DNA from: Schmidtea nova | Lineage: Eukaryota | DNA: 64,000 nucleotides | Direction: 5' to 3' | Assembly: GCA_044892505.1 (NCBI GenBank) | Contig: CM097883.1 | Coordinates: 278,070,001-278,134,000 of the forward strand | In this document: one piece after another, positions 1 to 54,589 of the stretch | Layout: the number at the start of each line of letters is the position of its first letter | Position numbering within the stretch: the first letter of the stretch is position 1 | Position numbers and translations under genes: made by a program | The notes under the pieces: model-generated | What the model saw: the letters and a program-made list of their open reading frames with translations, nothing else | Database searches by the model: none | Told to the model about the DNA's origin: nothing

Positions 1-1302
1 GTGAATGTAGGTACATTGATTTACATACTCATCCCAGTCGTTTTGATTTTTGTTTACAAAAACTGATAACCTATTTAATAGTGTGCCATTAAATCGTTCA
101 ACTAGGCCATCTGTTTGAGGGTGATATGCAGTCGTATTTATTTTCTGTATGTCAAAGATATTTGCTAGTCTTTGAATTATTTCACTCATGAAATTCTTTC
201 CTCTGTCTGTGAGTAACTTCTTTGGTGTCCCAATTCTAAATATTATTTTTTCTGTTAATAATTTGGCTACTGTTTCTGCGGTCTCATCTTTAGTCGGAAA
301 AGCTTCTGCCCACTTTGTAAAATAATCACTGAAGACTAAGATATGTCTGTTACCTTTAATTGTGACGGGTAATTTGCATAAAAAATCCATAGCGCATAAT
401 TCCATTGGCGAATTTATTACCGGTATTGGATGGAGTGGGGCTTTTGTTCTTGTTCCCGTATTTTTTCGAGTGGCACATATTGTGCATGAGTTACACCATT
501 GCTTTACATCATTTTTAAGATTTTCCCAATAGTATTTTTGTAATAATCTATTAGCTGTTTTTCTAGCTGAAAGATGTCCTCCGAGTGCACCATCGTGATA
601 TTGTAATAAAAGTATTTGTTTCAACTTCTGTGGTACTACTATAAGTTGTTTACCTGTAATATCTTCCATCATTAATACATTTTTGCTTAATTTAAATTTG
701 TTATTACTTCCTTTAATAACTTCATCTCTTACTTTACTAAGTTCAGAATCGTCTATTTGTTCTTGGTATATATCTATTGGATTTTCAGCCACCACGGCAA
801 AAATTTCTAATACGCTTAATTCTGGTATTCGTGATAATGCTTCTGCGTTTTTGTTTATTCGACCAGGTTTATAAATAATTTTTACATGCATATCTTGTAT
901 TTTCATTGCCCATTTTAGTAATCTACTTGATGTATCTTTATGTTTCCATAATCCTTCTAATGGTTTGTGGTCCGTTCGTATTAATACTTCTGATCCATAT
1001 ATGTATTGCTTGAATTGTCTAAGTGCGAACATTATTGCATAACATTCTTTTTCTATAGTTGAATATCGGGTTTCCGCACTTTTTAATGTTTTACTTGCAT
1101 ATGCTATGACATAATCTTTGCCCTTTTCCTCTTCCTGACCTAAGACTGCTCCTACAGCTTTTCCACTAGCATCAGTCATAATGATGAATTGTTTTGTGAA
1201 ATCCGGGTATCTTAATATTGGAGCTGTTACTAATTTTTCTTTGAGTTGCTCAAAAGCAATTTGTTGTCGTTGCGTCCATATTTTTTGTGACTTTCCATTA
1301 TC
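1..1302 (-). CDS. RNase H and integrase, in the same frame as the polyprotein, after a single TAA at 1303-1305
   Basis: Manual translation continues in frame without stops to base 1: WTQRQQIAFEQLKEKL, ILRYPDFTKQFIIMTDASG, RTDHKPL, HDGALGGH...CNSC (HHCC), AMDFL, LLTDRGKNF, YHPQTDGLVERFN (DDE). Confidence 0.92.
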
Positions 1303-4300
1303 TTAATTTATTTTTTGTACTATTTGTGTTTTTCTCCCATCTTCTTTTGTTTTCACTCCCTTTGTTAATTCAATTAATGGGGCTGCAATTTTAGCATAAT
1401 TTTCTATGAATTTTCGATAGTATCCTGTTAAACCTAAGAATCCTTGTATTTCTTTTACATTTTTTGGAATAGGAAACTGTTGTACTGTTTTAATCTTATC
1501 TGGATTTGGAATGATGCCATCAATTGATACAATATGTCCTAAATATAATGCAGACGATTCTGCCCATTTACATTTGGTAGGTTTGATTTTTAGTTTAGAT
1601 TTTCGAAATCTTTCTAATACATTTTTTATGTCTTGAAGATGTCCTTCGAATGTTTTTGATGCTATCAGTATGTCATCCATATAAACGGCACAGTGTTGAA
1701 CATCTATTAGTATGGTGTTCATCAATCTTTGAAATGTTGCTGGTGCATTTACCATCCCGAATGGTAATCTTAAAAATTCATATAACTCATCTTCAATCAC
1801 GAATGCTGATTTTTCTATATCTCCTTCTTCTATTTGAATTTGCATATATCCCTTATTTGCGTCTATAACTGTAAAATATTTAGCACCTCTAAGTTTATCA
1901 TATTGTTCTTGTGCTTTAGGGAATGGATATGAATCTTTAACTGTAACTTCGTTTAATTTTCTATAATCGATGCACATCCTTATCTCACCATCTTTCTTTC
2001 TAACTGGTACTATAGGTGATGCCCATTGTGAAAAACTTTGTCTAATTACTCCTGCTCCTTTTAATTCGTTGATTTGTCTTTTTATTTCTTCCCTAAGTTT
2101 ATAAGGAGTTACATAAGGTCTTTGTTTTAATGGTCTGGCATTTCCTGTATCAATTACATGTTTTATAATATCGGTATCTCCTAGGTCAAATTCATGTTTG
2201 GCAAAAACATCATTATACTCATCAATTAAGGTTTGTAACTGTTGTAGTTGTGTTGCGGTCAAATAATTATTAGTTATTTTAATTTTATCATAGAATTTAA
2301 TATTATTTTTTGAATTTTGTTCGAAGCTCTTTTCGAGGTCATTTCCCATGATGTATAATTCTCCTATTTCATGTTTGTTCAAATCACATTTAGATAATTG
2401 TCCCAACTTTGTACCTTTATGAATTTTAACCTTTTTATTCTCAAAGTTTGCAATTCTTACTGGGATTACACCTTTCTTTGGCATTACACATTCATTTGCT
2501 ACCATAATATTGTTATTTTTTGCCATGTTAGTATTTGGTTCGAAAACGTATGTATCTTCGCTTTGAACATTTACCTTTATAGGTATAATATTATCACTTT
2601 CGTATTCCAATTCAAATTCCTCCATTGCGTAAATGTTTATATCACTTCGGTGGGTCTTATTTATCTTTCTTTTTATTTTATTATCTGATAGATCTATTAC
2701 ATACCCTTTCAATTTTTTAAGGATGTCTATACCTAGTATACATTTTCTATGGCATATATTTGCTACCCTAAACACATGGTTTATTCTTTGATTTTCGAAA
2801 TGAACTGTAAGTTCGATATTTCCTCTGATAGGTATTGTGTGTGAAGAAAGGGATACTAGTTCATCATTTGTCGGTCTAATGTTTTGACGTTGTTGTTCAG
2901 TTAATAACTCATTTTCTATTAATGATGCTGCTGCACCTGTGTCTACTAACGCATTTATAGTTTGATTATTTATCTTTATTTGAGTTCTTGGTCTCATTCC
3001 ATTTGCTTCTTCTCCTTCTTCTATTCCATAGCATCCATATATTCTTTTAGGTTTTTTTGTGAATATATTACCACTATGTTTTTCCACAGGTATTTTGACT
3101 TCAATCTCGTTTTGTAGACTTTTCAATTGCTCCATATGTATAATGTATGGTCCCCCTTGTGGTTGTTCAATGTTTTCAGACTCACTTGTATGATTATTTT
3201 CTTCATTTACATTTTCGTCCATTAATCTGTCTTCTTCCGTTTTTCTAATTATCCTTTTAATATCTTTATCATGTTTTGCTGTTATCAAGTATTTCGCAAC
3301 AAATGGACATAAACAAGCCAACATTTTGAATGAATTACCAAATACCTGCCTTAATTGTCTAAGTGATACTAATGATGAACATATCATTTTCAGTAATGCA
3401 ACTGAATAGTAAATGCCAAGTATAGTTGAGAATGTGTTACCTAAGATTGCAAAATATCCCCAAATACTATATAAAACTTTGTAAACTACCTTTTTAAAGT
3501 GTTCTTTTGATAGAAGTATATCAAAGTTATATTTTCCATCATGGCTGTTCTCTATTATTTTACTGGCGATAACTGTTAATACCTTTTCTTTTTCATTGGG
3601 AAATAATAAGTGTTTTCTTGCGCTTTCTATAGCTTCTTTTGAATATAACCCATTGCTATCAAAATCATTTACTTCGAAGAATTCGAGTTTTTTATCTAAT
3701 TCTGTCATTTCTAGTTTCAAAGGTGTTATTGCTACCTTCTTATCTGACATTGTTATCCATGTTTCATCATCTAGTTGATATAAAGGATCCAATAAATTTG
3801 TACATTTATCAATCTTCTTTGGTGTATAGTTTTTGTCTGTTAGTATTCGTGTAATTGGTTGTAGGTAAACTCTTTCTCCTTTATATATGACAGGTAATTC
3901 GTTTGTACATTGTTTGTTTGTGGCTAGTGCTACACTGACTGGTTTACATTGAAATGTTTGTATGACTTCCCCTACAACTCTTGCAAAAGCGCCTCTTTCT
4001 GAAAAAAGCATTGGGGCCATTAAGTCTGGGTTTGTGATAGCTAGTACCATCTTTGTTCTTAAGATTTCTCGATTAAGCTTACAATCATTTATAATAGTTT
4101 CCTGGTATACTCTATCTAGTTGCATTAGTTGGTGATGGTAAAAGTAATCTATCTTATTATTAAAGTAGGATGAAAGTTTGACATCGTATTTATTGACTTT
4201 TAGTTTTGCATCTTTTATTTCATCTTTGCTTAGATATATACCCTTATAATTGGTCTGTATTATTGATCTCCCACACTTAACACTTTCTCCTTTGCTTACA

Positions 4301-7300
4301 AATCTCATTGCTTCTCCTGAAGATTCTGTCATGTATATCGTTGGTGTATCTTTTTCTTGAATTACTATTGTCTTTCTTTTTCTATCTTTTATTTTTGTTG
4401 ACTCTGAGTTTGTAAATTGTTTGCCTCTTATAGTCATGAATTTTAGTGATTTTAATTTGGTCAAAGGACATTCATACGAATCGACTTTATATATTACAAT
4501 TGATTCTCCGGTATCACAACTTATTTCTTTTGATGTACAGAATGGGTATGTCATCATCTTTTGTGTTACGCTATCGAAAGATGCCTTAAATTGTCTAAGT
4601 TCAACAATATATTCTCTTCTCACAACGGCATTTTTTATAGTATGTCCCCATATCTTGTATTCTCCACCTTGACAATATCCACCATGTGAAGACCATCCAA
4701 CTACATCAACTCGTTGTTTTACACGTGCACCTATCTGTGCTTTTAATTCAATTTCATGTATTTTTATCTTTTTTGATTGAAATGCATGTTCACATTCTTG
4801 TGGAGTTATCGTAATAGTATCCGGTGTAAATGAGGGCCTTAAGATTGTCCGCGCTATGCTGTGACATACAAAAGCCTCTTCTGAATATCTTATTATACAT
4901 TCTCTCGCTTCGGTATGTATAAAATCTGATTCCTGATACACATGATATAATCTAGGTTCGGTTGTAATTAAGTTAATCGGGTTCGCTTCTGGACAGTTTT
5001 CTATATCTAATAGTGAATATTTTTGTCCCCATTTCGGGTTCTGACAGTCGTATGCTATCATGCCCGTACACCCTTTTAATATACTTAATAATATTGCTAT
5101 CATCACTATTATTGTGGATATAAATGATTTATGATCACTTTTCCCTGATTTCTTCGTCGTTTTATCTATTATTTTCTTCAATTTTCTTTCAATTTCTTTG
5201 TCATTAGTACATTGTTGCTCTGCGTTTATCTCCATTGATTCATCTTTTCCTCTTAAGATTTCCCATCCTCCATTTGCATGTATCCAAGGTATCGCATTAT
5301 TTTGTAACTTTGTAAATATCCTTTTAGCAATTTTACTTAATTTCTTTGGTTTCATCTTCAGAACATCTTCTGATTTATAAATAAGATACGCAATTGCTGT
5401 TATAATTCTATTTTCATCAATTCCAGTAGTAAATAAAATATCTAAAACTTCGCCTTCATCCGCTTCTTGCTTTGTTAATCCTTTAATCTCTGACTCTATA
5501 ACTTCAATTTTTTTATATATATTAATAATAAATGATGGAGATCCTATGTGTTCATATACTTTAGGATACATGATTTTTATTAACTCTACTAGTACATCAA
5601 CGTCCTTATCTTTCGTTGACGTTTTGTTTGCAATTTCTTTCAGTTTTTCAGCAATGTTATTATTCTTTAATTTTGGGAGTCTTTTTTCCTCCAACGTAAA
5701 GGTCATTATACCTCCTATAGCTCCTCTCGCGGTCTCTTCCTTATCTTCTTTGTCTGGGCTTAGTTTTGAAATTTTCTTGTTGGCTACTCCTAAACCACTT
5801 TTTATTGAAACTGTTATGACGTTATTTTCACTGGCGTTTATCCCATAATCCATTAAACAATCTTCGTTTTGCATCTTCATCCCAGAAAAATGCAATATTA
5901 TCTCATCATTTATTCCTAGATCGGCATACCAATTTGCTCTGGCTATTTGTTTCATCTTTTTTACCTTTGTACACGCATGTACCCCTTGTTTATGGACAAT
6001 TATTCTAGGTGTATCTTTATCATTTGTTTCTAATGTAATTTCTAGTGGCTCCTGTAATCTTTCATTTTTTCGAACATAATCGCTATAACATTTCAACATC
6101 TCTTTAATTTCAATTTCCAATTCAAATAATTGGGTTAATCTTTGTTTCTTTACTAATAATGGTATCAAATTTCTCAGATTCTCCAGATTTATTCCTTCCA
6201 CATGAATTTTATTTAATATTCTCAAAACTTCATTATCATCAACTAGATAATTTCTCAAAGATTCCTCTAATTCCTGTCTCAAAGTATTCTGTCTATCTAA
6301 TTCTGCAAAAAACTGTTCATCTCTTTCTCTTTGCTGTCTCAACTCTTCATTATCTATCTTAACTTCATTTGTAAAAGTTTTGAATTCGTTTATCGAAACA
6401 TTAATTTTATTTCTTTCGATTAATCTCTCATATTTTGTTTTAAATTCTTGTAATTCATCTCTCAGCATCTCAATTTCATTATTCGACTCTTTAACCTCCA
6501 TACTATTTATTTGTTTAATTTCAGGCTCTTTCTTAAATTGAACTCTATTTGGAGATTCGACTCGTGCATTTTTACATGCTTTTGCCATATGGCCATATTT
6601 CTGACAGTTGAAGCATCTTATTTCTCCGCGAAAATTAACTTTATCTCTCCCATCGTTACTAAACGGACTCGATCGTCTATCTCTATCAAAAGTTTGTCGA
6701 GTGGGACTCATTCTCCGTCCTCTATAATTGTTTCTATTTATTTCGAAATTGTTTCTATTATCACTATTTCTATTTTCGTTAAATCGATTTGTTCGAGTAT
6801 ATTCGAAATAATTACTCCTGTTGCTTGGATTATCATTAAAACGATTATTTCTATTGTACCCACTATTTCTAAAACGACCATCTCTATTATAGTTTCCTCG
6901 ACCCCTACTATCTCGATTATAATAATTATCTATATAATTCCCCACATAAGTATTTTTATCATTAAATTCCAAATGATCATTATTTCGATTATTCGATCTG
7001 CCTCTCGGACTATTAAATCTATTATTGTTGTCAAAACTACGACTCGGACTTGGACTAGTCTTTCTCCTATTTTTAACATAATTCAAATATAGCTGCTTCA
7101 TCTCCTCCCAAGGAATGTTATCATCTTTATCGTTTGACTTGGTTTTTCCTTTTTCAATTTCCTGAATTTCTACTGCATCAATCACAGAACTAAATCTATC
7201 CCTCTGTATTGCTTCAATTCTTCGTGCCTTTTGTACTAACTCATTTAAATTCTCATATTCTACCATGATCAAAGATTTGTATAAATGTTTTTGGATACCA

Positions 7301-7773
7301 TTCCAAAATTGATCCTCAATTAGTCTTGTAGTATGTTCTCCCACACCAAAGGCTTTTCGAGCTAATTCAGTTAAATTATAAACATACTCTCCAATTGTTT
7401 CTCTGCTCCCTTGATATCTATTTCGAAATTTTTGTACATTTATCTTTTGTAAATCTCGCTCGATTACTATTTCACCTCTCAAATTATCAACTAAATCTTC
7501 CCAATTTCTACCCTTACACTCTAAATTATTATATGCTTGTAATGCATACCCCTTTAAATATAACGGTATTCTTCTTTTTAATTCATCTCTTGTCCATCCA
7601 CAAGCTTCTGCACACTGGGCAATTTCATCGAAAAAATCATCAAATTTTTCAGGTTCGTCCTTATAATGCTCTATGGGTAATGTTTTTATCAAAATGTTAC
7701 GGTTATTATTATCCTCATCTCTATTTTGCCAAATATGTCTTATATTATCATTATTTTCATTATTTTGCGCCAT
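1303..7773 (-). CDS. Gag-Ubl-Bcl-2-like-Env-PR-RT polyprotein (first ATG at 7773; ORF track starts at an upstream TTG, 7797)
   Basis: Capsid-like RIPLYLKGYALQAY; knuckle CFNCQKYGHMAKAC (~6575-6616); Ubl-like LHFSGMKMQNEDCLMDYGI (~5843-5900); BH2-like WIHANGGWE (5260-5286); hydrophobic signal FISTIIVMIAILLSILKGCTG (~5060-5125); Cys-rich ectodomain; TM (~3365-3480); protease ALVDTGAAASL (~2925-2955); RT YMDD (~1673-1684). Confidence 0.92.
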   Translation of the reverse strand: MAQNNENNDNIRHIWQNRDEDNNNRNILIKTLPIEHYKDEPEKFDDFFDEIAQCAEACGWTRDELKRRIPLYLKGYALQAYNNLECKGRNWEDLVDNLRGEIVIERDLQKINVQKFRNRYQGSRETIGEYVYNLTELARKAFGVGEHTTRLIEDQFWNGIQKHLYKSLIMVEYENLNELVQKARRIEAIQRDRFSSVIDAVEIQEIEKGKTKSNDKDDNIPWEEMKQLYLNYVKNRRKTSPSPSRSFDNNNRFNSPRGRSNNRNNDHLEFNDKNTYVGNYIDNYYNRDSRGRGNYNRDGRFRNSGYNRNNRFNDNPSNRSNYFEYTRTNRFNENRNSDNRNNFEINRNNYRGRRMSPTRQTFDRDRRSSPFSNDGRDKVNFRGEIRCFNCQKYGHMAKACKNARVESPNRVQFKKEPEIKQINSMEVKESNNEIEMLRDELQEFKTKYERLIERNKINVSINEFKTFTNEVKIDNEELRQQRERDEQFFAELDRQNTLRQELEESLRNYLVDDNEVLRILNKIHVEGINLENLRNLIPLLVKKQRLTQLFELEIEIKEMLKCYSDYVRKNERLQEPLEITLETNDKDTPRIIVHKQGVHACTKVKKMKQIARANWYADLGINDEIILHFSGMKMQNEDCLMDYGINASENNVITVSIKSGLGVANKKISKLSPDKEDKEETARGAIGGIMTFTLEEKRLPKLKNNNIAEKLKEIANKTSTKDKDVDVLVELIKIMYPKVYEHIGSPSFIINIYKKIEVIESEIKGLTKQEADEGEVLDILFTTGIDENRIITAIAYLIYKSEDVLKMKPKKLSKIAKRIFTKLQNNAIPWIHANGGWEILRGKDESMEINAEQQCTNDKEIERKLKKIIDKTTKKSGKSDHKSFISTIIVMIAILLSILKGCTGMIAYDCQNPKWGQKYSLLDIENCPEANPINLITTEPRLYHVYQESDFIHTEARECIIRYSEEAFVCHSIARTILRPSFTPDTITITPQECEHAFQSKKIKIHEIELKAQIGARVKQRVDVVGWSSHGGYCQGGEYKIWGHTIKNAVVRREYIVELRQFKASFDSVTQKMMTYPFCTSKEISCDTGESIVIYKVDSYECPLTKLKSLKFMTIRGKQFTNSESTKIKDRKRKTIVIQEKDTPTIYMTESSGEAMRFVSKGESVKCGRSIIQTNYKGIYLSKDEIKDAKLKVNKYDVKLSSYFNNKIDYFYHHQLMQLDRVYQETIINDCKLNREILRTKMVLAITNPDLMAPMLFSERGAFARVVGEVIQTFQCKPVSVALATNKQCTNELPVIYKGERVYLQPITRILTDKNYTPKKIDKCTNLLDPLYQLDDETWITMSDKKVAITPLKLEMTELDKKLEFFEVNDFDSNGLYSKEAIESARKHLLFPNEKEKVLTVIASKIIENSHDGKYNFDILLSKEHFKKVVYKVLYSIWGYFAILGNTFSTILGIYYSVALLKMICSSLVSLRQLRQVFGNSFKMLACLCPFVAKYLITAKHDKDIKRIIRKTEEDRLMDENVNEENNHTSESENIEQPQGGPYIIHMEQLKSLQNEIEVKIPVEKHSGNIFTKKPKRIYGCYGIEEGEEANGMRPRTQIKINNQTINALVDTGAAASLIENELLTEQQRQNIRPTNDELVSLSSHTIPIRGNIELTVHFENQRINHVFRVANICHRKCILGIDILKKLKGYVIDLSDNKIKRKINKTHRSDINIYAMEEFELEYESDNIIPIKVNVQSEDTYVFEPNTNMAKNNNIMVANECVMPKKGVIPVRIANFENKKVKIHKGTKLGQLSKCDLNKHEIGELYIMGNDLEKSFEQNSKNNIKFYDKIKITNNYLTATQLQQLQTLIDEYNDVFAKHEFDLGDTDIIKHVIDTGNARPLKQRPYVTPYKLREEIKRQINELKGAGVIRQSFSQWASPIVPVRKKDGEIRMCIDYRKLNEVTVKDSYPFPKAQEQYDKLRGAKYFTVIDANKGYMQIQIEEGDIEKSAFVIEDELYEFLRLPFGMVNAPATFQRLMNTILIDVQHCAVYMDDILIASKTFEGHLQDIKNVLERFRKSKLKIKPTKCKWAESSALYLGHIVSIDGIIPNPDKIKTVQQFPIPKNVKEIQGFLGLTGYYRKFIENYAKIAAPLIELTKGVKTKEDGRKTQIVQKIN

Positions 7774-11236: not shown

Positions 11237-12055
11237 ATGCTTAATGAAGAATTGGCCGAAGACAAAGATTCTATTGATAATGAATTGTTACGAAATGTGG
11301 TCAATAAAATCGAGAGCTCTCTTATGGATGATTTAATTAATGTGATGTCTTCGCGAGATCCAATTATTTCTGATAAAGTGCGATCTTCAGTAATTGTAGA
11401 AAAGCTACAATTTAATTCACCGATATCTGACAATAATTATTGGTGTGAATTGAATGTTGGTTGAACACCTCTTACAGAAAAACTCAAAAATTCTCCAATT
11501 TGTAAACTTTGTTATAATTTTCGAACGGGCATTATGTCCAATCCCAGACTCATTCTTGATGATATAGAAGATGGATCTGAGGGAAATGATACTAATAAAA
11601 CTGATGATATAATATTGATGCTCGTAAATCGAAAAGACAATTTAATCACTTCTTTCCAATCTCAGTTCGACCAATGGCCAAATTCGTATAAAGACAGACC
11701 ATATCTGAGGAAAATGATCAGTAAAAGACGCAAGGATTATCTAAAATTATGCGCCTCGAAAGAGGACTTGTCTCTGTCACGATTCTTAGAGAGTTTTGGA
11801 GAGGCAATGAAGTCAATTCCAAGGACTGTTTTTCTTTCAGAGCTTCTAATCAGCGTCAGGACACTTTTAGAGGATCCTCGTCAAATGGATAAGCCACTAT
11901 TATTCAAAACCGATCCAAGTGGGTTTGTAGCTGGTCATCGAGCTGTTGCTGTCGGTGGAAAACAATTGGAAGCTAAAAGCTATGGGGAAAAGAAGCTTCG
12001 TAAAAATACAGAATTTTCAATTGATGAGAAAATCAATCGGAGCTGGACGCGGTGA
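11237..12055 (+). CDS. Two orphan ORFs (75 and 173 aa) of unknown function, possibly TE-derived
   Basis: Protein-like composition, but no recognisable motif. Truncated or overlapped by the gag-pro remnant at ~12050. Confidence 0.25.
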
Positions 12056-16824: not shown

Positions 16825-19800
16825 AATACGAAATATAAATTTCATAATTCCCCACAAAAGTCAACATATGTAATTACTGTTGTCCGTAACTTTTGTATTA
16901 TATTATTTTTAAGATAAATTTTAAAATTATATTAATATTAATTTTACTTATTAATAAGTAATAATTTTCTAATTAATTTTTAGAAATGCAATCGTCATTC
17001 AATAGTGATTTTTCAGCTATTAATTATATAATTTATATTTTTAAACATAAAATAATACAAAAGTTACGGACGTCGTACAATTGTAATTATATATGTTGAT
17101 TAGTGATACGTAATCGCATGTGAAAAATCCAATAAAATTTTTATTAATCTAATTAGTTAAACTCTCAAAATGATATTGTATTTTGCATATTGCATTTTCG
17201 GATTGAATAATTGGATGATCAAAGCCTCGCAATTTATTTGTTAATAATAATTTTGAAAATCTTAAGACAATATTTTACAAAATGGAAATATCAATGCGCT
17301 TCATTCATGTTTTATTATGCTTAATAATATTACTCTTCCCGGTCTTTCTAGCATGATTCCGAACTCGTGTTAAAGAGATGAACCGCACCTTATTCAATTT
17401 CTGGCATGACCAAATTGCGTGACAGATTTATTGCTGAACATGTCTTTGTGGGGATACAATTAATATGTAAATAATTGTGTGTTAAACTATGGATATATAG
17501 CTTTTCATTAAATGGATCACTGATGATGTTCACACTATCGATCTATCATTAACAGATTACATTAATTATAAAGGAAAATATGCAAAATTAATTCCCCAGT
17601 CTGCTGGTCGTTATCAAACAAAAGGATTTAGAAAAGCACAATGTCCAATTGTTGGGCGATTAATATGTTCTCTAATGATGCACGGTCGAAATAATGAGGA
17701 AAGGATCAAAGCAAACAATATCCTAAAACATGCATTAGAACTGATTTATTTGATGACCCGAGAAAATTCAATCCAAGTGATGGTTAACGTAAATGTTACA
17801 ATTTTGTTTGACAAAAAGAATACCGCTTTGGTGCTGTTTGCAATTCACCCACAAGCTATGGCGGCAATTCGAAATCTTGATGCCTGTTTCCTGCGGGCAA
17901 ACAAATGCATTTACACATATCAAAAATCAATGTCATCCAATTACCAACGGAGGAGGCCAATCACGCAAATACCACAGTGTTGAACTTTAAAAGACTTAGA
18001 AATTATTTTAACATTAGTATTTTCACTATTTTTAAAAATAAATTTTCTAAAATTTCTAAAAACCTGAGAAAACGGTGAACCAATATTATCATTCAAGTTA
18101 ATTTTCTTACATTACATTTTTTTCAGCATTTGTTCAGTTTATTGAATAAGTTTCTTTATTACTTGGAAATCTATTGAACTGAAATAATTAGGTCGTACAA
18201 ATATTATGCGTACGTTGCGCACTTACATATTATGTCGTGATCCCTCAACTTATCCATACATATCTGTACGCGAAATATCTCAAATTTAAAACTCCCTATC
18301 TACACGCGCGTTCGTAATATATGAAGGGTTTCTAATTCTGAAGTATCTTAATGACAATGAAGTATGTCGAAAAAATAATTTATGCAGATTTTTTAAAATA
18401 TTTCATTTGTTCATTATAGGTAGATGGGAATATTTCTAGCTTATTGGTGGGTGTAGTAGATGGGCATTCGGGCAAGGATTGTGCTCAACTTGTCAATAAA
18501 GCGGGATTAGAATATATAGCTGCGTCTTGTTTAAATTCAGAAAAATTAGATATTTCTCTTAAAGTTTTTTTTCTGATAAACTAATTGTAATAATCGGCAA
18601 ATCTATAGGAATATAAAGATATTTCCCACTATACAATTGTGCGCCGTTTTCATCCGGCTCAGTGGGAAAGTTTAAATGATTCAGTTAAGTCTCACTTTAT
18701 GAAATCGCTTTTGGTTTATATGGAGGAAATGCTTGAAGATAAAAATAGAATCGGTATAAAAATTTAGGACCTGCGCAAAATTGATCTTTTTCCTGTTATA
18801 GTTGTACCGGAATTAGCCATGAAAAATTCTTTAATGCGCTTAGATAGAGATATGTGCATTCCGAATTGTAAAGAGGATCTTAAAAATTGGTTTAAAAGTC
18901 GTCCATTATTAAGACTTTCTCTTAGTGGAGCTGTGGCATTATTTATGAGATTATATTGGCTTGGGGAAGAAGGGGAGAAAAATCCAACTATTCACGTGGC
19001 AAACATCGGTGATTGTGGGGCAGTTTTGGCTAGTTATGATCAAGGTGGTTACTATTTATACTATATTATAAATTATCTTATTTTTACATTAATTTTTATA
19101 ATGCTCTCGCTGAAATATGTTTTTTTCTTAGGAAACCATTGAAAATTATTAGATTTTAATCTTAGTATATTGTTATATCTTTTCAATATAAAATGATAGA
19201 TAATTACTGCCATCAGCGGCCTTATCGCGATTAATTCATCTCTTGAAATCTATCGCCCACCCATTGAAAGAAAGTTGTGAGTCTGCGATGACTCATCATT
19301 TACTATTGAATACGAAGTCAATTGCATATACATCCATGAAAAAAATTTTAAGTCAAACCTTCCCATAGACAATGACGCGATGACTCACATGTTACTTTAT
19401 ATCAGCGGTTCCCAACCTTTCTGGTGCTGTGATCCCATGATAACATTTGCCAATTTGTGGCGACCCAAAATAATAAAATTAATAGGGTTGCACTTCAGTT
19501 TGTGGTGTAAAATAAATAAACCAAACTTTAATTAATTAAATAAAATTAAGATTCTAATAAAATTTAAAAAAATTTAAATTAAAAATAAAATTAATTAAAA
19601 ATAAAATAAAATAATAAAATTAATAATAATGATAATTAATAATAATTAATAAAAATATAAAAATAAATAATAAAAATTAAATTAATAAAAAAAATAAAAT
19701 TAAAAAGATTCTAATTAAATTAAGATTCTAATTAAATAAAATTAAGATTCTAATAAAATTTAAAAAAATTAAAATTAATAAAAAAAAATAAAAAATAAAA

Positions 19801-22800
19801 AAATGAAATTAATAATAATGATAATTAATAATAATATTAATTAATTAATAATTAATAAACAATAAAATTAATAAAAATAAAATTAAAAAGATTCTAATAA
19901 AATTAAGATTCTAATTAAATTAAGATTTTAATTAAATTAAGATTTTAATTAAATAAAGTTAAGATTCTAAATAAAATTAATTAATCAAAGTTTGGTTTAT
20001 TTATTTTACACCACAGGGTTGCACTTCAGTTACAGCATTTTTGCAGCCAAATATTATGATAATTATGTTTCTGCGACCTCTGGCAAACTGTCACGCGACT
20101 CCAAGGTTGGGAACCACTGCTTTATACAGATATTATGGCACAGATTTTTTTCCAAGACCCCTTTTAGTGGGTTTCTCAGCCATAGCATGTTGCATGCCTT
20201 CAGTTGACGTACTAAAATTTCAGGAATAATTTCAGATGCAGCTCCAACATGAATTTCATCATAAGGCGATAAACCTTCATACCCCTCTCTACCATCACCT
20301 ATTTTTAAATGCAAATGGCCTGTATATACGAGTTCTTTAATTTCTGGAATTTTATTAATATTCAAAATAGATTTATGAACAAGTTCTTTAATGTGATCAA
20401 TTCCTACAACGACTCCTTGGTTGCCAAGCCTTTTCATAAAACGAGCAGTTAAATATCCGCTACCTGTACCAATATCAAGAATTCTAGCACCCGGCTTCAA
20501 CCTAGGCAGAATTTGTTCAAGTGCTACTGCATGCATGTGTGGAGCACTGATAGTTACACCAAAACCAATCGATTTTGGTGAATCGTCATCAACAAAATTT
20601 GCACGATCAATCGATAACATTAAATATTCTACCTCATCCGAATGAATATACTCGTCATTTTTTTAAACGTTGGGTTAAATCAGCTTTTGAATTAAATCCA
20701 CTAAGAAATTTAAAAATAGTTTGGCTAAGGAAAAAAATAACTATTAATCGACTATTTGAAATCATTTATTTTGACGAATGTTAACACGTTTTCTACCATT
20801 TTTAAACTTCAGAAAAAAAGTATTTAATCTAAAAGAAATATTAAAACAAACACCATCTTTTTAAGTAAATAAATGTAAATGTAAATAAAAAATAAATAAA
20901 ACTCAAACAACTCAGAAACGCCAAATCAGCCAATATCACAACCAAGTTATCAAAAATATAAAGTTTTTAGAAAATCTTCGATATCGACTTTCTAGACCAC
21001 TACACCCCTCCCCCCTAGACAAAGACATGTTACTATTTATAGACAAAGATACTTACAATTTTTTCCAAGTCGCTATGACTCATCATCGAAAACTTATATA
21101 AGCCAAGACAAAAACCCATTGTTTAAATATAGTTTTGGCTCCATTTTGATAAGTTTAAACAAAGACTTATATTATTATTATTTTATAAATATGTTTATAT
21201 GATGTGTGTTAGTCATGTTTTCACAGACGCTTAGACTATAAATAGTAACATCTCTTTGTCTATTGGAAGGGATAACATAATATCTTTAGTAACATATAAG
21301 TTATCGTGAGGGAGGGTCTTCAACTAAAATAAATTTCTATGCCAAATATATATAGTCTATATATAGTAACATGTCTTTGTCTAGGGGGTTGACTTAAAAA
21401 AATTTTCATGGATGTATATGCAAATGGCTTTGATTTCCATAGTAAATGATGAGTCACCGCGAACTCACAACTTTTTCCATGAGTGTAGCTGCAAACACAC
21501 ACAATCAGGCTTGTTTTTATGTGGGTTTAATTGGCCAAAAATATTTCGGCACAGCCTTTATCAAGTGTGTAATACACCGTGTTTCAATGGCGTTTCTCAT
21601 CTATAATAATCAGTACCTTATCCATTGCTGTTTAACTGAATCGTAGCATTTATTATGTCGTAGACAGAGATAGAAAAAAAAATAAAATTACACACAAACA
21701 CAAAATATAGAAAAAAACAGATGTAAACTTTCAGATGCGTTTTTTGTTTTATTCTCTAATCTCATTCAATATTTTAATCAACACAAAAATTGTAAATTAA
21801 AATGGCCGATAAATTTTTTTAAATGAATCTGAGGAATCTACCTTGGGTTTTCATGAAAATGATGACATATCATCGTAAGTAATATAATTTAAAGTTAGAA
21901 TAAATTTATATTTTCAAAGATTTTCAGAAAATTCAATGGAAACAATTCCATTTCATGAAGATGACGAAATATCTTCGTAAGTAATTTAATTTAAGTTACA
22001 ATAAATTTTTATTTTCACAGAATGTCAGAAAATTCAATAGAAACTATTCCATTTCGTGAAGATAAATTGGAATATGATATCACTTATATTTATTTATTAA
22101 AATATTTACAATGATATTAGCCTTTCAGATATTACATGTACCTCTAGATACTGCATTACATAGGATACTCGAAAAAATGTTCGAAAATGGTTAGTTGAAA
22201 TAATATTTATTTAAAAAGTTAATGGACTTTTATAAGATTTCAGATATTGATAAAGGCAGAATAATAAGTGCAATGGAAATTTACTTGGAATATCAAAAAG
22301 TTCTATCAGAAAAATAATTTATATTTATAAAAAATATGGCCACCTACCAATGTACAAAAGAGGTGGCAGTAAGCCTCAAATTTCTGAAGAAACCGGAAAT
22401 AATTTATTGGATTTTGTGGAAAACAATTTAGGTGCATCCTTAGAGGAAATGAGAAAATTCCTCAACCAAATCAATTGCAATGTAGCAAGAGCGACAATTT
22501 TTAGGTTTCTGAATAGGAATATAATAACATTATAAAAATAAGGCCATGTGTAGCTGCTCGAAATTCAGACCACGTCCTCGAGTTAAGGTTACAGTATGTA
22601 ACTCGCTTTTTAGACGAAGCATAACAAGACAAAAAATTAATTTACATTGACGGGTGTGGATTTAATTCATGGTCAGGCCAGAATCTGGGAAGGAAGAAAA
22701 AAGGGGAAAGAATTTATTAGATAGTACCAACTAACCGAGGCTCAAATATGTCACTGGCTCTTGCAATTGGCTTAAAAGGACCAGAACATCACAAATTAGT

Positions 22801-24518: not shown

Positions 24519-24569
<51 letters not shown>

Positions 24570-40323: not shown

Positions 40324-43300
40324 TTAAAATCTCAACATACCAACACCTCTTTGGAATGTCGCTGGTACATCAGTTAAACCAAATTGTAAAAAATTAAATT
40401 CATAAAAACCTTTTCCATCTGAAAACGCTCGTTTTCCTTTATCTGTCTCTTTGAATCTAAATTGATTGTAGCCTTTGTTTAAATCAATAACAGTAAAATA
40501 TTGAGCTTCTCCCATTTTGTAAAACATTTCTTGAGGAACCGTCTTTCTTCTTGACCACGACAATAGAGTAAGAAAATGGTGAAAAACTGTCTCTAATAAT
40601 ATTAAATTCTTTCATAGCTTTTATTTGTCTATCGCTTTCGTATTGATGTGCATATGGAATTCTGTATGGCCGTAATTTATTTGGAGTTTTGTCAATTATT
40701 GGAATTTCATGCTCAATTATAGGAGTTACTTCCAAATCATACTCATGTTTCGCAAAAATATCTTGATATTTTCTCAACAATTTTGTAGATTTTTCTATTT
40801 GCTCTTGCGTCAACTCTTGACTGTCAACTTGGGGTTCCTTGTATATTTTGATATTTTTTAGTAATATTTTATTATCGATTTTTAAGATTTTTGTTAGCTT
40901 TCCCAATTTCGTTTTTGGTTTTAATGACACTTCTTTGTCGTTATTATTAGTGATATAAACCGTAATAAACTGATTTTGAACTTTCACTATTTCGTAGCAC
41001 ATTGGAGTATCTTATTTTTCAATCAATTTGTCACTTGGTTGAAATATAAACTCATCATCTCGAACTCCCATTGTATTCACATAACAAATAACTTCCTCTA
41101 AGGTGGAACTCTTAACGTTTGATTTAGAAACACGTCTCCCGTTTCATGAATGACTTTTACCGTTTTTCCTACTAATAGATTTCCAGTTTTCAAATCAATA
41201 GAGATTCCTTCCAATTGCTCCAACGCATCCATTCCTACCAAACACATTACTGGGCTATCTTTCCTTATTAGAGCATCATGGACATTTTCTTTATTTCCAA
41301 TATTAAATTTTACTCTGATCTGTTCAATGATATTTTACTTGTTTTTTGTCATTGCTCGTACTACTTCTTCTGCACTTTTCATCCGTGCTCTTTCCCATGA
41401 ATTTAATAATTTATCTGATAATATTGTATAGCTTGAGCCTGAAACTTGTAATGCTTTGACTCTATGTTTATTTACTTGTATCCATGTTCTTTGCTGTCTT
41501 CCTTTATTTCCAATTGTCATTAACGCATAGTTCCCTGGTAATCACAGCATGTTTCTCTTTTCAATTTCTGCACTAGTTGTTGCGATTTGCTCATTTGCTA
41601 ATTCAATGTTTTCAATTGGTCTCATTACCTTTAACTTCTCTACTGGATAGATTGGTGCTGTTGGCAGAAAAGTCTTTGGAATGCATAATCGACTGAAAGT
41701 GTTTGTTCCACTCGCTTGTGGTATTGATTGCAATAGATCTAGAATTTTCCCGCACATCATTTAATTTAATTTTTACTCTTTTTATAATAATATATTGGAG
41801 GTACTTTTACTTTATCTCCATTCCCCTTTTCGCTGTCCGAACTCGAATCAATGTCTTTTCCATTTTTATTGAATCGTAATTTTCCATAATACTTTGCCTA
41901 TAGTGGAATAAATAGTCTTTTTTATTACTAAAATAACTAGTAAATTTAATATCCGTAGTATGTATTTTGACTTGAGTTTCTTCAAGTCTTTTTTTGGATA
42001 CATAGATTCCTTTGTAATTAGTCTCATAAACTGTTTGACTCCACTTATTCACTATTTGTTTTTGAATAAATCTCAAACTATTGTCTAATAATGTTGACAT
42101 CAGTACGACTGCAGTTTTCTTTGTTCTCAATGGAGTAATTCTAGGTGTCATATCTGGTTTTGCCTCCCCATTCAGATTATCCGGCCTTTCTCTCAACTGC
42201 TTATCAATCATTTCATTAAAACTCATTGTTTTTAAATGTATCAGATTACATAGGTTTGTCTTGACTTCATACGCCATAATTAATTCTCCCGTTTGACAGC
42301 TAGCCTGCTTCATATTACAGAATGGGTGCGTTTGTAACTTGCCTGTATCATCATCAAAGGCTCCTTGGAATTCTCTCAATTCCGTCAAATACTCTTCCAT
42401 CACCACAAACTTATCAATAATTTCTCCATTTATTTTGTATGGTTCTCCTTTACAATCACCATTAGCTCTTATCGTCCCTTTTTCGATAATTGTTTCTCGT
42501 GTCGTATGATTTAATTTAGCCTTCAATTTAACCTCGGGTCTTATTTTCAATTCCCCCTTTTGTAACACAGCCATACAATTTTCTGGGTTTATATTAACTG
42601 ACCTCGGGATTGAATACATCTTAATTAATGATATATGACTCCATTTACCGCAATAAAATACAAAACTCGTTCTTTTAACAATGTACTCTCTTACCATTGC
42701 ATGTTTAAAGCCTGATTCTTGTAATACGTGATACTTTGCATCATTTTCTACTGTTAGACTCATCAATACATTCTGTCATGTCCCCATCTTCCCCATTTTG
42801 GTTTGAGAACAGTCATTTGCGATTAGATAGGTTGTTTGCGTCGTAATTGCACATAATATTATGATCATAAACACTATACATGGAAGTTTCATGGGTTTGC
42901 TTCTCAGTAACCCTCTATAACTTTCTCTTCTTTCAACTAATGGTTCAGTGTTTTGTTTAACTAATTTCTCCCAGCCTCCATTCTTCTTTATCCAAGTATC
43001 CACATGTTTATACAATAGTTTGCTAGCCTTTTTAATAATTTAGTCTCGTTTTTACATCTCTCAGTAATTGTATGTTCAGATTACAAACAAAATATAGCTC
43101 ATAATTATCAATACTATATCTTTGTCCATTTCTCTTGACATCATATCGGTTATCACACTCTCATCACAGAACTCCATATTTTCTTTTGCGTATCTCAATA
43201 CAACACAAAGTCTCTTTTTTAATTTTTTTGCAATTTTTCTCACGTATAGTTCTGCTTGTATTTTCTCTGCTGATTTACCATACACTTCATTAACTAGAGC

Positions 43301-46300
43301 ACGTACAACTTTCTCAATTTCTTCTTAGTCATTCTGATCTCTCTCCTCCTAGAGTGTCTGTATTATTCCACATCTCATTTCGTATAAACCTTTGCGTTGT
43401 TTTTCTTCCGTAGTATTAGCAATCACCATTTTTGTCATATATGCCTTCAGTTTTTGTTACTTTTTCATCAATATTCTGCTCAGTTTCATGTTCTACTTCA
43501 TCTTCTCTCATTTCTTGTTCCTCTTGCATTTCATCATCATTATCCATTATCTTAGCTCCAAAATCCGGAAATTCAATTTTAAAACCTTTTTTCTACTCTT
43601 TCTGACTTCACTTGCTTTACTGCAATTATATCATTAATAAAATTTTGTAGAGGCTCTTGATCCGTAAAGAATTCATCTCCATCAAGCTTTCGTGGAACAC
43701 AGCGATAATCAAATAAATATTCATCATCATCTAATTCAAAACCTTTATACGTTAACACATTTATTCTATCATTACCCATAATTTATGCTGCCCTTCGTCA
43801 TATTTTGCTTACTTTCGTACACCAATGTTTGTCTGTATATTCTACTCCTCGATCATTTATCTTTAAAAATAATACAAATAGCTCTATAAAAATTCCTTCT
43901 CTAAATTCTTGTTCAAATTTTCGAATAAGAGTTTTTATTGTTTTACTATATTCGTTTTCCGAATTCACATAGGGTCTAACAGAGTCTAGAATTTTTAATT
44001 TGTCTTCCTTTTTTGAGTTCTAAATTCAAAATATTATTTAATTTATTATTAATGTCATCTGTACTTTCTTTAAACAATGCTTCGATTAATTCAAATCTGG
44101 TTCTGTCAAAATCATTTGTTACTGTCTTCTCATTGGCGATCATACTCATTAATTGCATTTCATTTTCAGCACCATGAATTAGTCCACAATCTACCAAATA
44201 TTCGTCGTCTTCCAGCACTCGACCCATAAATCCAAGTTTCACTGCCCAACTTTCACACTTGTGCATTACCTCTCTCTTTAGTTCATGCACTCTCTCGTAT
44301 GCTTCGATTTTATAGTTGGAGTTTGTAACATTTAAAGGATTCATTTGGATAAATATATGATCTAACAATTTATTTTCCGTTAGGATTGGCCAAATATTTC
44401 CATATGGTTTTTAAATATATCTCGTTTATCCATGCTCGCTTTATGAAATTCTGCACAAAGTTTAATAACGGTTTTATTTTTTGTCAGACTCAAAGGTATT
44501 TTAGTTAGCTTTGTTAACAATTCTGAGAATTTCTGAGAATTTATGCTTGGTTCTGCAACTAACTTTCTGATCTTGGCAATAATTACAATACTCCTTTCAC
44601 TTTGCATGTCAGCTTTAACCTTATTACTTGAAACTTTATCTGATTCTGATTCGCCTTCACTCAACTCTTGCCCCGTCATCATGTCGGTGTCTGCTTCCTC
44701 ATCTGATTCAAATTTTGCTATCAGTTTATTCAGTTTTTGATTCAATTGTTTAACATTGCTCTCGATCTTTTCTTTGAAGCTATCTTTCTGAACATAAGTT
44801 ACATTATTATTTGATGAGTTTTTGTCCTGAAATCTTATTGTTCGCTTTAGAATTGGCCTTTGAAATTTATTAGCATTCCTGGGACCGGATCTTGCAATGT
44901 GTCCATAATTTCTACACAAATGGCATTGAATTTGTCCGTTCAAATTTGTATTGTCTCGCTGTGGCGATGGTAAAGTTGATAGTGATCTTGATCTTGAAAA
45001 ACAATTTCTGGAAACATGTTCTTTCTTACCACAGAGATAACATTGCACCTAATCAAAATTTGATTTAACATCAGGAACTACTTTCCGAAAATTTGTTTCC
45101 ATATCATTTTTAAGCCAATCTTGGGTTATTCTCCTTGGTATACTCTCAGAATTATTTTTAAACCAACACTGATTTTCATAATGGCCAATCATCTTGCAAT
45201 TTTTACACTGAATAACTCTAGATCTCTCAGCGCCTTGAAGATTACGGCTTGATCTATTTATATTGACCTCGATTTTCCATTTGGGTGATGGGCTTTTTGA
45301 TCGTTGGAATTTATTTTCTGGCTCTCAATTGTTTTGGGTTGGTGTGATTGATCTTTCACTTTGAGCTGGAAAAATCGCGAATACATCAGATTAGTTTTTA
45401 GTGCTCTTTAAATTTAATTCAATTATCATTGTTTTTTAACTAATTCATCAAAATTATCATAATCTATGCAGCATAATGCCATTTTTATCTCCTTATATTT
45501 ATTCCTGACAAAAATTGGTCTTGGATTAGCTCTTGCATTTGTTGGGCTAGACCTAGTTGTTTCGAATTTTCTTCAAATGATTTGCTTGCGAGGGTCGATA
45601 AATGATAAGCAAATTCGCTCAGTTTCATTCGGATTTTAAACTCTGCTATAAAACCTTTGGCGCATTAATATTTTGATCTCCTCCAATATATTTTGTAGCT
45701 AAAGCGTATTTTAATTTTGCCCAATCATTACCGATTAATTTTTTATCAATCTGTTGCCAAACCTCTCTAGCTGCTCCTTTAAGATATAACGATAATCTCT
45801 GAATCATAATCACTTGAGAACACCCGTACGCCGTTGCATACATGAAGTAATCGCTCATAAAATCAACAAAAATAGCCGGATCTCCTCCATTTATTGTTCA
45901 ACGGATAATCTTTGACAATTGGCAAAATCATTATTTTCTTAAACAACTGAAACTGGCAAATCTTCACTACTCATTATGGGTTGCTTTCTACTTTTGCTTC
46001 AAAAATTATACTGACTCACTTTAATAATTTATTTTCTCATATTACACAAAATCTATATTTCAAAATTATTACTACAATCAATAATTTACCTTGTCACAAT
46101 TTCGTTGAATAATCTTTTCCTTTATCACAATTTATTTTCACTCCTTTTTCAATTAATTTTTATTCATTAATCCTCCAACAACTTTGATTACGTCGGGCTC
46201 ACCAAATATTTTGGGTTATAGGGTTGTTGGTGAAATGTAAATGTTACCAATCAAATATTTGACTCCAAAGCGTGCATTATTTGTTCGACAAAATAACAAT

Positions 46301-54478: not shown

Positions 54479-54589
54479 GTACTCCTGGTAACCACATATC
54501 TAAAATTTATATCTAAAGTGCTTATTGGTTTATAAAAATAAATATTATATAAATGCGTCTATACTAGTGATTTCCAAATTATTGACATG

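What the first reader, a model, noticed from the sequence alone, without database searches (positions are those of the whole stretch)
5255..5665. Bcl-2-like domain embedded in a retrotransposon Gag-Env-Pol polyprotein
Seen: between the Gag knuckle and the Env signal lies a ~135-aa helical segment with three motifs in Bcl-2 order and spacing: IAEKLKEIANK (BH3-like, cf. LRRIGDE), ILFTTGIDENRIITAIAY (BH1-like, cf. LF.DG.NWGRIVA) and PWIHANGGWE (near-canonical BH2, W..xGGW). Established: Bcl-2-fold proteins are used by large DNA viruses (herpes, pox, asfar) to block apoptosis or innate signalling. As I recall, planarian Burro elements carry an anti-apoptotic cargo, but of the BIR type. I know of no Ty3/gypsy with a Bcl-2 fold. 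Inference: this is a captured vBcl-2 that protects cells during particle production, or a Bcl-2 fold reused as a membrane or matrix module. BH1 lacks NWG, so a canonical BH3-binding groove is not guaranteed.
Basis: partly seen in the sequence, partly recalled or inferred. Interest (0 to 1): 0.92.

Follow-up and report, generated by a model that had tools for sequence, protein, structure and literature searches.

The report
Bcl-2-like domain in a retroelement polyprotein
A retrovirus-like mobile element in this AT-rich animal genome really does carry a divergent copy of the cell-death regulator Bcl-2 between its capsid and envelope parts, but the same arrangement has already been noted in the 'Burro' elements of planarian flatworms, so this is a further example and not a discovery.

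Summary
Window 5248-5664 encodes a helical domain of about 140 aa inside a gag-env-pol Ty3/gypsy polyprotein. Its best and only consistent match is the Bcl-2 family: Pfam PF00452 E 2e-4, and PDB hits that are all Bcl-2 family. Three other divergent copies keep the same BH1-BH2 register: one degraded copy in this window and two environmental contigs. A low-confidence AlphaFold model still retrieves only Bcl-2-family folds.

Caveats: every Pfam score is below the curated cut-off. BH1 has lost its Trp and Gly.

The domain follows a ubiquitin-like segment. It precedes the hydrophobic segment that starts a mononegavirus-type Env. After signal-peptidase cleavage this would leave a C-terminally anchored cytosolic Bcl-2-like protein (inferred).

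The claim of novelty fails. Arkhipova and Yushenova 2019 report a BCL2-like motif in planarian Burro-2/-3/-4, preceded by a Ubi2/SUMO-like motif and followed by an in-frame mononegavirus-like Env.

Verdict: real, a new and compact member of a known kind, with function untested. Interest 0.35.

The parts
1..7773 (-). Element A: gag-env-pol polyprotein gene, from its first ATG to the window edge, where it is cut inside integrase. It has one in-frame stop in pol and is otherwise open.
   Evidence: One reading frame is used throughout. The part beyond the stop is open for 434 codons and is 48% identical to the RNase H-integrase of relative P0004.
6568..7773 (-). Gag, with a CCHC zinc knuckle at 6574-6615.
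   Evidence: Pfam zf-CCHC E 2.6e-4. Gag aligns with the gag of P0002, P0004 and P0005.
6028..6510 (-). Charged, leucine-rich stretch read as a coiled coil (by eye only).
   Evidence: Sequence. No tool test was run. Most of it is absent from P0004 and P0005.
5788..6006 (-). Ubiquitin-like segment (weak evidence).
   Evidence: Pfam ubiquitin E 0.092. In a profile with the L001 counterpart, 32 of 33 PDB matches at E<=1 are ubiquitin or Ubl proteins, with single-domain E 0.06-0.9. The AlphaFold model is low-confidence (pLDDT 39.9), with element order strand-strand-helix-strand-(helix)-strand-strand.
5248..5664 (-). Bcl-2-like helical domain, aa 712-850.
5623..5655 (-). It is the first helix of the model, at the position of alpha1/BH4, not BH3.
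5386..5439 (-). BH1-like segment (end of one helix, loop, start of the central hydrophobic helix). Arg is kept; Trp and Gly are lost.
   Evidence: Alignments to Bcl-xL and T. suis BCL-2. Four-copy alignment.
5260..5289 (-). BH2 motif (Trp, four residues, Gly-Gly-Trp).
   Evidence: Trp, Ile and Gly-Gly-Trp are kept in 4 of 4 copies.
5068..5124 (-). Hydrophobic segment with a basic flank upstream. It is the signal/anchor that starts Env and, by inference, the membrane anchor of the Bcl-2-like product.
   Evidence: It is one of only two strongly hydrophobic 19-mers in the polyprotein. In P0113 the Pfam Env model starts at this segment.
3166..5067 (-). Env: class III fusion glycoprotein of the mononegavirus type, with its own membrane anchor at 3367-3423.
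   Evidence: Pfam PF24664 Monjiviricetes_fusion E 3.9e-87.
2701..2994 (-). Aspartic protease.
   Evidence: Pfam RVP E 3.8e-9.
1528..2004 (-). Reverse transcriptase.
   Evidence: Pfam RVT_1 E 1.5e-35.
1..1278 (-). RNase H and the start of integrase, running off the window.
40348..45030 (-). Element B: a degraded, distant relative of A (about 28% identity over the Bcl-2-like end and Env) that still shows BH2, the hydrophobic segment and the start of Env.
   Evidence: At least 7 in-frame stops lie inside aligned stretches (4 in the Ubl/Bcl-2 region, 1 in env, 2 in pol), and there are at least 4 frame changes. Much of gag and parts of env and pol are not alignable.

Best explanation
Window 5248-5664 (minus strand) encodes a genuine but divergent Bcl-2-family domain of the cellular, multi-BH pro-survival type. 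Together with an upstream ubiquitin-like segment it forms an accessory module, inserted between Gag and Env of a compact gag-env-pol Ty3/gypsy element of the kind described in planarians as Burro.

Shown:
- The homology signal.
- Its conservation in four divergent copies.
- The domain order Gag, CCHC, Ubl-like, Bcl-2-like, hydrophobic segment, mononegavirus-type Env, PR, RT, RNase H, IN in one frame.
- The absence of the module from otherwise collinear relatives.

Inferred:
- The hydrophobic segment after the domain acts as the internal signal for Env, with its basic flank on the cytosolic side.
- Cleavage behind it would leave the Bcl-2-like domain on the cytosolic face of the ER membrane, held by a C-terminal anchor. 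That is the topology of cellular tail-anchored Bcl-2 proteins.
- The domain would either stay fused to Gag or be freed by the element's protease.
- Its most likely role is to keep the expressing cell alive while the element's proteins accumulate.
For: - Pfam Bcl-2 (PF00452) is the top hit for three independent copies that are only about 26% identical to each other, always at profile positions 35/36-100. Element A scores E 2e-4, P0113 7.7e-5 and P0007 0.013.
- phmmer against the PDB: all 60 listed hits are Bcl-2 family. The best is T. suis BCL-2 (6V4M), E 0.0018, bias 0.0.
- A three-copy profile improves this to E 4.9e-5, with 109 sequences at E<=1. All 60 listed are Bcl-2 family.
- AlphaFold gives eight to nine helices. 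Foldseek on that model returns only Bcl-2-family chains in the top 50 of the PDB, aligning 135-165 columns with target-normalised TM up to 0.57.
- The named top hits among viral proteins are viral Bcl-2 homologues.
- BH2 is kept in 4 of 4 copies.
- The polyprotein has only two hydrophobic segments, one on each side of the Env ectodomain. A basic flank precedes the first.
- P0004 and P0005, about 36% identical across env-pol and 27-28% in gag, lack the whole module.
- The literature reports the same order, Ubi2/SUMO-like, BCL2, Env, PR, in Burro.
Against: - All Pfam scores (16.5-23.6 bits) are below the curated cut-off of 31.4.
- The model is low-confidence (mean pLDDT 55.7, pTM 0.43), and no Foldseek match reaches E 0.001.
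- The BH1 positions aligned to Trp and Gly of Bcl-xL are never Trp or Gly (0 of 4 copies). The Arg is kept in only 2 of 4, with Lys in a third.
- No BH3 signature was found.
- Only four copies are known, and two of them are broken.
- No Burro sequence could be compared directly, and the host species is not identified.
- Nothing here tests processing, topology or any effect on cell death.
Confidence: 0.6

Rival explanations
1. The fold is Bcl-2, but it is reused for something other than binding BH3 helices. One option is a membrane-proximal, matrix-like link that holds Gag at the membrane where Env is inserted. Another is a modulator of signalling or autophagy, as in the groove-less Bcl-2-fold proteins of poxviruses (established knowledge).
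For: - The Trp and Gly of BH1 are lost in all four copies, and no BH3 signature is seen.
- The domain is translated in one chain with Gag and sits directly before the only N-terminal membrane segment.
- A ubiquitin-like segment precedes it. Burro elements carry several ubiquitination-related motifs.
Against: - The closest matches are cellular pro-survival proteins (Bcl-xL, Bcl-2, A1, T. suis BCL-2), not groove-less viral folds.
- BH2 and part of BH1, which line the groove, are the best-conserved columns.
- T. suis BCL-2 itself has Ser in place of the BH1 Gly, so that loss is not disqualifying.
Confidence: 0.28
2. Chance resemblance: a helical, lysine- and isoleucine-rich spacer of an AT-rich genome that happens to contain a Trp...Gly-Gly-Trp string.
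For: All scores are below Pfam's gathering threshold. The model is low-confidence. The word-indexed protein searches found nothing.
Against: - Three copies about 26% identical to each other each hit the same family in the same register.
- The profile E-value improves when the copies are combined.
- HMMER reports bias 0.0.
- No family other than Bcl-2 appears among 60 listed PDB sequence hits or 50 fold hits.
Confidence: 0.07
3. A passenger without function: a recently captured host fragment that is carried neutrally and is decaying.
For: The domain is missing from most relatives. BH1 is degenerate.
Against: - It is kept, with BH2 intact, in four lineages that have diverged to 13-26% identity in this region.
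- In element A it lies in a frame open for more than 2,000 codons in a genome of about 30% G+C.
Confidence: 0.05

Closest known systems
Burro / GYPSM1 giant Ty3/gypsy elements of dugesiid planarians (Jurka 2007; Grohme et al. 2018; Arkhipova and Yushenova 2019, PMC6431247)
   Same: - One polyprotein with Gag and CCHC knuckles.
- A Ubi2/SUMO-like motif directly before a BCL2-like motif.
- An in-frame Env with hits to mononegavirus fusion glycoproteins, followed by PR and RT.
- An AT-rich host genome.
   Different: - Element A has no BIR, MATH/TRAF, ankyrin or dUTPase hit at E<=1.
- Its polyprotein is far shorter: about 2,600 codons are in the window before it is cut inside integrase, and the complete relative P0004 has 2,871 aa, against 4,873 aa for Burro-1 ORF1.
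- Direct sequence comparison could not be made.
Cellular multi-BH pro-survival Bcl-2 proteins (Bcl-xL, Bcl-2, A1/Bfl-1; Trichuris suis BCL-2 A, PDB 6V4M)
   Same: - BH1-BH2 register and spacing.
- BH2 identical over nine residues to T. suis BCL-2.
- The Arg of BH1 is kept.
- A hydrophobic segment C-terminal to the domain.
   Different: - It is embedded in a retroelement polyprotein.
- The Trp and Gly of BH1 are lost.
- No BH3 signature.
- The C-terminal hydrophobic segment lies 45 residues after BH2 and doubles as the Env signal.
- The Pfam score is below the cut-off.
Viral Bcl-2 homologues of large DNA viruses (gammaherpesviruses, iridoviruses, African swine fever virus, poxviruses)
   Same: A host-type Bcl-2 fold carried by a virus-like genome. 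These are the named top fold matches in the viral structure library.
   Different: - Those are separate genes of DNA viruses. This is a domain of a reverse-transcribing element's polyprotein.
- The fold matches are weaker than to cellular proteins.
GAG-ENV-POL Ty3/gypsy 'errantiviruses' of Nematoda, Bryozoa and Platyhelminthes (eLife 2026, PMC13524379; Sacco et al. 2022)
   Same: Env of the class III type placed between gag and pol.
   Different: That paper describes the Env of these groups as HSV/gB-type and mentions no Bcl-2 or ubiquitin-like domain. Here Env matches the Monjiviricetes fusion family and an accessory module precedes it.

Membership tests
Bcl-2 family (Pfam PF00452) | Score at or above Pfam's gathering threshold (31.4 bits) | tested here: not met
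   22.3 bits for the isolated domain of A, 23.6 for P0113 and 16.5 for P0007. It is the top family in A and P0113 and a close second in P0007, always at profile positions 35/36-100.
Bcl-2 family (Pfam PF00452) | BH2 motif (Trp, spacer, Gly-Gly-Trp) at the alpha7-alpha8 turn | tested here: met
   Present at aa 837-846 and identical over nine residues to T. suis BCL-2. Trp, Ile and Gly-Gly-Trp are kept in 4 of 4 copies.
Bcl-2 family (Pfam PF00452) | BH1 motif with Asn-Trp-Gly-Arg at the alpha4-alpha5 turn | tested here: not met
   The aligned positions read Asp-Glu-Asn-Arg in A. Across four copies Trp is 0/4, Gly 0/4 (Ser in 2, as in T. suis BCL-2) and Arg 2/4 plus one Lys. The flanking hydrophobic pattern is kept.
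Bcl-2 family (Pfam PF00452) | BH3 helix (alpha2) with the Leu...Gly-Asp signature | tested here: not met
No such signature occurs where alpha2 should lie (about aa 731-758).
Bcl-2 family (Pfam PF00452) | Bundle of about eight helices around a central hydrophobic hairpin | tested here: inconclusive
   The model has eight to nine helices but a mean pLDDT of 55.7. The Foldseek top 50 in the PDB are all Bcl-2 family, with TM 0.38-0.57 on the target, rmsd 5-14 A and best E 4.6e-3.
Bcl-2 family (Pfam PF00452) | C-terminal membrane anchor | tested here: met
   A hydrophobic 19-mer at aa 892-910 with a basic upstream flank. It is also the start of Env, so its origin is ambiguous.
Bcl-2 family (Pfam PF00452) | Binding of BH3 helices and an effect on cell death | not testable with these tools
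   No data.
Burro-like gag-env-pol Ty3/gypsy elements | Env of mononegavirus type in frame between gag and pol | tested here: met
   PF24664 E 3.9e-87 between the knuckle and PR, in one frame. Compare.
Burro-like gag-env-pol Ty3/gypsy elements | Ubiquitin/SUMO-like motif directly upstream of the BCL2-like motif | tested here: inconclusive
   Pfam ubiquitin E 0.092. Ubl proteins dominate the weak PDB hits. The model is unreliable, though its order of elements fits a beta-grasp fold.
Burro-like gag-env-pol Ty3/gypsy elements | BIR, MATH/TRAF and ankyrin motifs; giant size (over 30 kb) | tested here: not met
   None of these families is hit at E<=1 in element A. The polyprotein is of ordinary length for this clade. 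The total element length is unknown because the window cuts it.
Burro-like gag-env-pol Ty3/gypsy elements | Sequence similarity to published Burro-1 to -4 | not testable with these tools
   No Burro sequence was available in any collection I could reach.

The most novel reading that the evidence does not exclude
The Ubl plus Bcl-2 module is not a peculiarity of giant planarian elements. It would be a mobile cassette shared by a wider clade of compact, env-bearing retroelements, including copies seen only in environmental assemblies. In this reading, its placement directly before the Env signal is a general device that turns any upstream domain into a tail-anchored cytosolic protein. The domain would retain a working BH3 groove despite the degenerate BH1.
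Probability: 0.25. Interest if true: 0.6.

Novelty: new member of a known kind. Interest (0 to 1): 0.35.

Why it matters
Host-derived Bcl-2 genes are a hallmark of large DNA viruses. Their presence in reverse-transcribing elements is documented only as a motif annotation in planarian Burro elements. In the literature I could search, no structural or functional study was found.

This copy is nearly intact and compact. It places the domain in a simple architecture in which the likely membrane topology can be read from the sequence. Collinear relatives without the module give natural comparators. That makes the question of what a retroelement gains from a Bcl-2 fold easier to approach descriptively. 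It does not change what is known in kind.

Tried and rejected
Searches and tests that gave little or nothing:
- Word-indexed protein searches with the domain, both within the whole polyprotein and alone, found nothing.
- The exhaustive representative search found a single relative, P0113.
- A metagenome scan with the BH2 pattern gave 27 pattern matches but no relative.
- A profile of the four copies found no Bcl-2-like domain in P0001-P0006 or P0008. P0002 is collinear across the region, but only 18% identical there.
- An exact look-up of the window's polyprotein found no record, so the host was not identified. Rfam and tRNA scans of the window were empty.
- No LTR could be delimited for element A. 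Its 3' end lies outside the window, and the upstream DNA has no second copy in the window.
- The ubiquitin-like segment folded alone gave an unusable model, so no fold search was run on it.
- Grohme et al. 2018 itself is not in the paper library. Its content is cited through the 2019 review.

Full report
**Observation**

The interval lies on the minus strand, inside a frame that is open for more than 2,000 codons. The plus strand is closed by stops, and the interval as written is one base out of frame. I count residues from the first codon of that frame. The positions below are, except the hydrophobic segment, which is.

| Feature | Residues | Window bases |
|---|---|---|
| CCHC knuckle | aa 395-408 | 6574-6615 |
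| BH1-like motif | aa 787-804 | 5386-5439 |
| BH2 motif | aa 837-846 | 5260-5289 |
| Hydrophobic segment | aa 892-910 | 5068-5124 |

**Is it more than chance?**

- Pfam Bcl-2 (PF00452) appears for the whole polyprotein at E 0.0039.
- It is the top family for the isolated 190-aa piece: E 2e-4, 22.3 bits, profile positions 36-100 of 100.
- phmmer against the PDB returns 66 sequences at E<=10. All 60 listed are Bcl-2-family proteins.
- The best of these is 6V4M (E 0.0018, bias 0.0), which shares the BH2 string over nine residues. 6V4M is BCL-2 A of the nematode Trichuris suis (PMC7456325).
- Every score is below Pfam's gathering threshold of 31.4 bits. Taken alone, the domain is only a candidate.

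**Independent copies**

The exhaustive search of 1.84 billion representatives found one relative. This is P0113, a 205-aa fragment from a JGI metagenome that holds the Bcl-2-like end, a hydrophobic segment and the first residues of Env.

The search with the whole polyprotein found eight gag-env-pol relatives. One of them, P0007 on an ENA contig, L001, begins inside the same domain.

The window itself holds a degraded relative, element B at 40348-45030. It keeps the Trp, spacer, Gly-Gly-Trp motif, the hydrophobic segment and the start of Env.

These copies are 13-26% identical to element A in this region. P0113 and P0007 each hit Pfam Bcl-2 in the same register, at E 7.7e-5 and 0.013. A three-copy profile improves the PDB match to E 4.9e-5. 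It gives 109 sequences at E<=1, and all 60 listed are Bcl-2 family. Agreement between independent, divergent sequences is the main reason I accept the homology.

**Fold**

AlphaFold2 on a five-row alignment gave a low-confidence model (mean pLDDT 55.7, pTM 0.43) with eight to nine helices between aa 712 and 879.

Foldseek with this model returned only Bcl-2-family chains in the top 50 of the PDB: Bcl-xL, Bcl-2, Mcl-1 and a fowlpox homologue. The alignments span 135-165 columns, with target-normalised TM up to 0.57 and best E 4.6e-3. In the viral library the named top hits are viral Bcl-2 homologues, with weaker scores.

This is consistent but not decisive.

**Motifs**

- **BH2:** Trp, Ile and Gly-Gly-Trp are kept in 4 of 4 copies, and the preceding Pro in 3 of 4.
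- **BH1:** the positions aligned to the Trp and Gly of Bcl-xL are never Trp or Gly. The Gly position is Ser in two copies, as in T. suis BCL-2. The Arg is kept in two copies and is Lys in a third.
- **BH3:** Extrapolated from the Bcl-xL alignment, BH3 would lie some 20-30 residues further downstream, and no Leu...Gly-Asp signature is seen there.

**Anatomy of element A**

The order along one frame is:

1. Gag with the knuckle.
2. A coiled-coil-looking stretch.
3. A ubiquitin-like segment.
4. The Bcl-2-like domain.
5. A charged linker.
6. The hydrophobic segment.
7. Env (PF24664 Monjiviricetes_fusion, E 3.9e-87).
8. PR.
9. RT.

The evidence for the ubiquitin-like segment is weak. Pfam ubiquitin scores E 0.092, ubiquitin-like proteins dominate the weak PDB hits, and the model is unusable.

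Pol carries one in-frame stop. The same frame then stays open for 434 codons, through RNase H into integrase, to the window edge. That part is 48% identical to P0004. Element A is therefore a young, nearly intact copy, cut by the window.

Element B has at least 7 in-frame stops inside aligned stretches: 4 in the Ubl/Bcl-2 region, 1 in env and 2 in pol. It also has at least 4 frame changes and large unalignable parts.

**Distribution of the module**

P0004 and P0005 are about 36% identical to A across env-pol and 27-28% in gag. They pass from gag to Env within about 30 residues and lack the coiled coil, the Ubl and the Bcl-2-like parts.

P0001-P0003, P0006 and P0008 show no Bcl-2 signal with Pfam or with a profile of the four copies. 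P0006 was tested with the profile only.

The module is therefore an accessory cassette of one sub-lineage.

**How it probably works**

The polyprotein has only two strongly hydrophobic segments, one before and one after the Env ectodomain. The first is preceded by a cluster of basic residues. In P0113 the Pfam Env model starts at that segment.

By the usual rules of membrane insertion (established knowledge), I infer the following:

- Gag, the Ubl and the Bcl-2-like domain stay in the cytosol.
- The first segment directs Env into the ER.
- The Env anchor brings PR-RT-IN back to the cytosolic side.
- Cleavage behind the first segment is plausible. Small residues sit at -1 and -3 in A and in P0113. 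It would leave the Bcl-2-like domain tail-anchored, like cellular Bcl-2.

Whether the domain is freed from Gag is unknown. I rate a pro-survival role as the most likely function, at about 0.4. Reuse of the fold for membrane tethering or for another interaction is second.

**What is known**

Arkhipova and Yushenova 2019 (PMC6431247) describe the planarian Burro elements. They report:

- A BCL2-like motif noted in Burro-2, -3 and -4 (Grohme et al. 2018).
- A Ubi2/SUMO-like motif just before BCL-2.
- Between BCL2 and PR, an Env with hits to mononegavirus fusion glycoproteins, in frame between gag and pol.

That is the order found here. The window's composition of about 30% G+C fits such a host, but I could not identify the species.

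The 2026 survey of env-carrying gypsy elements records GAG-ENV-POL elements in nematodes, bryozoans and flatworms. It does not mention Bcl-2. A search for later work on the Burro BCL2 motif found only the 2019 review.

**Verdict**

The domain is real. The claim of novelty is not. Element A differs from Burro-1 in lacking BIR, MATH, ankyrin and dUTPase hits and in being much shorter. I file it as a new, compact member of a known kind. Interest is 0.35.

**Limits and disclosures**

- There were no cellular Bcl-2 sequences of the host and no Burro sequences to compare with.
- The alignment is shallow.
It was not sent anywhere afterwards.
- An early notebook entry holds the bounds of the long frame as a tool printed them. 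I wrote it before I knew that one bound is a break, and I have left it unchanged.

Noticed in passing
window 40348-45030 (-): Element B, a second, distant and degraded copy of the same kind of element. It has at least 7 in-frame stops and at least 4 frame changes, but still shows BH2, the hydrophobic segment and the start of Env.
   Followed up: partly
window 34474-35093 (-): A third, short RT/RNase H fragment of a gypsy-type element, in two frames.
   Followed up: no
window 5788-6006 (-); L001 7072-7299 (+): A ubiquitin-like segment directly upstream of the Bcl-2-like domain. It is conserved (31% identity) in the ENA relative and matches the Ubi2/SUMO-like motif reported before BCL-2 in Burro. 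It does not end in Gly-Gly in either copy.
   Followed up: partly
P0004, P0005 (relatives from ENA assemblies): Collinear relatives that go from gag to Env within about 30 residues and lack the coiled-coil, Ubl and Bcl-2 module. They are natural comparators without the cassette.
   Followed up: partly
P0001, P0002, P0003; L001 12777-14612: The longer relatives (3,036-3,771 aa) carry three protease-like stretches each. P0003 has C2H2 zinc fingers between Env and PR. L001 has a gene with a weak ankyrin hit downstream of the element's protease.
   Followed up: no
window 22748-23161 (+) and 30380-31252 (-): ORFs with DDE transposase domains (DDE_3, E 1.6e-7; ISXO2-like, E 1.4e-13). These are other mobile elements in the same window.
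   Followed up: no
window 11534-12055 (+), 20063-20620 (-), 24960-25427 (-), 63046-63996 (-): Host-gene exons: a proteasome subunit (weak), protein-L-isoaspartate O-methyltransferase (E 1.9e-42), an ANAPC2-like TPR and an RRM protein. The window is ordinary eukaryotic chromosome, not a viral contig.
   Followed up: no
window 27981-28280 / 28382-28681; 54576-54740 / 57556-57833: A 300-nt direct repeat at 99% identity, 401 nt apart. Also two 80-nt repeats at 91% identity about 3 kb apart, possibly the ends of a small element.
   Followed up: no
window 19514-19909, 23504-23746, 24437-24628: Short-period tandem repeat arrays, with a related unit at 55413-55521.
   Followed up: no
window 29919-30069, 31429-31601, 33186-33339, 51213-51586: Runs of N (852 bases in all). 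I left them as they are.
   Followed up: no
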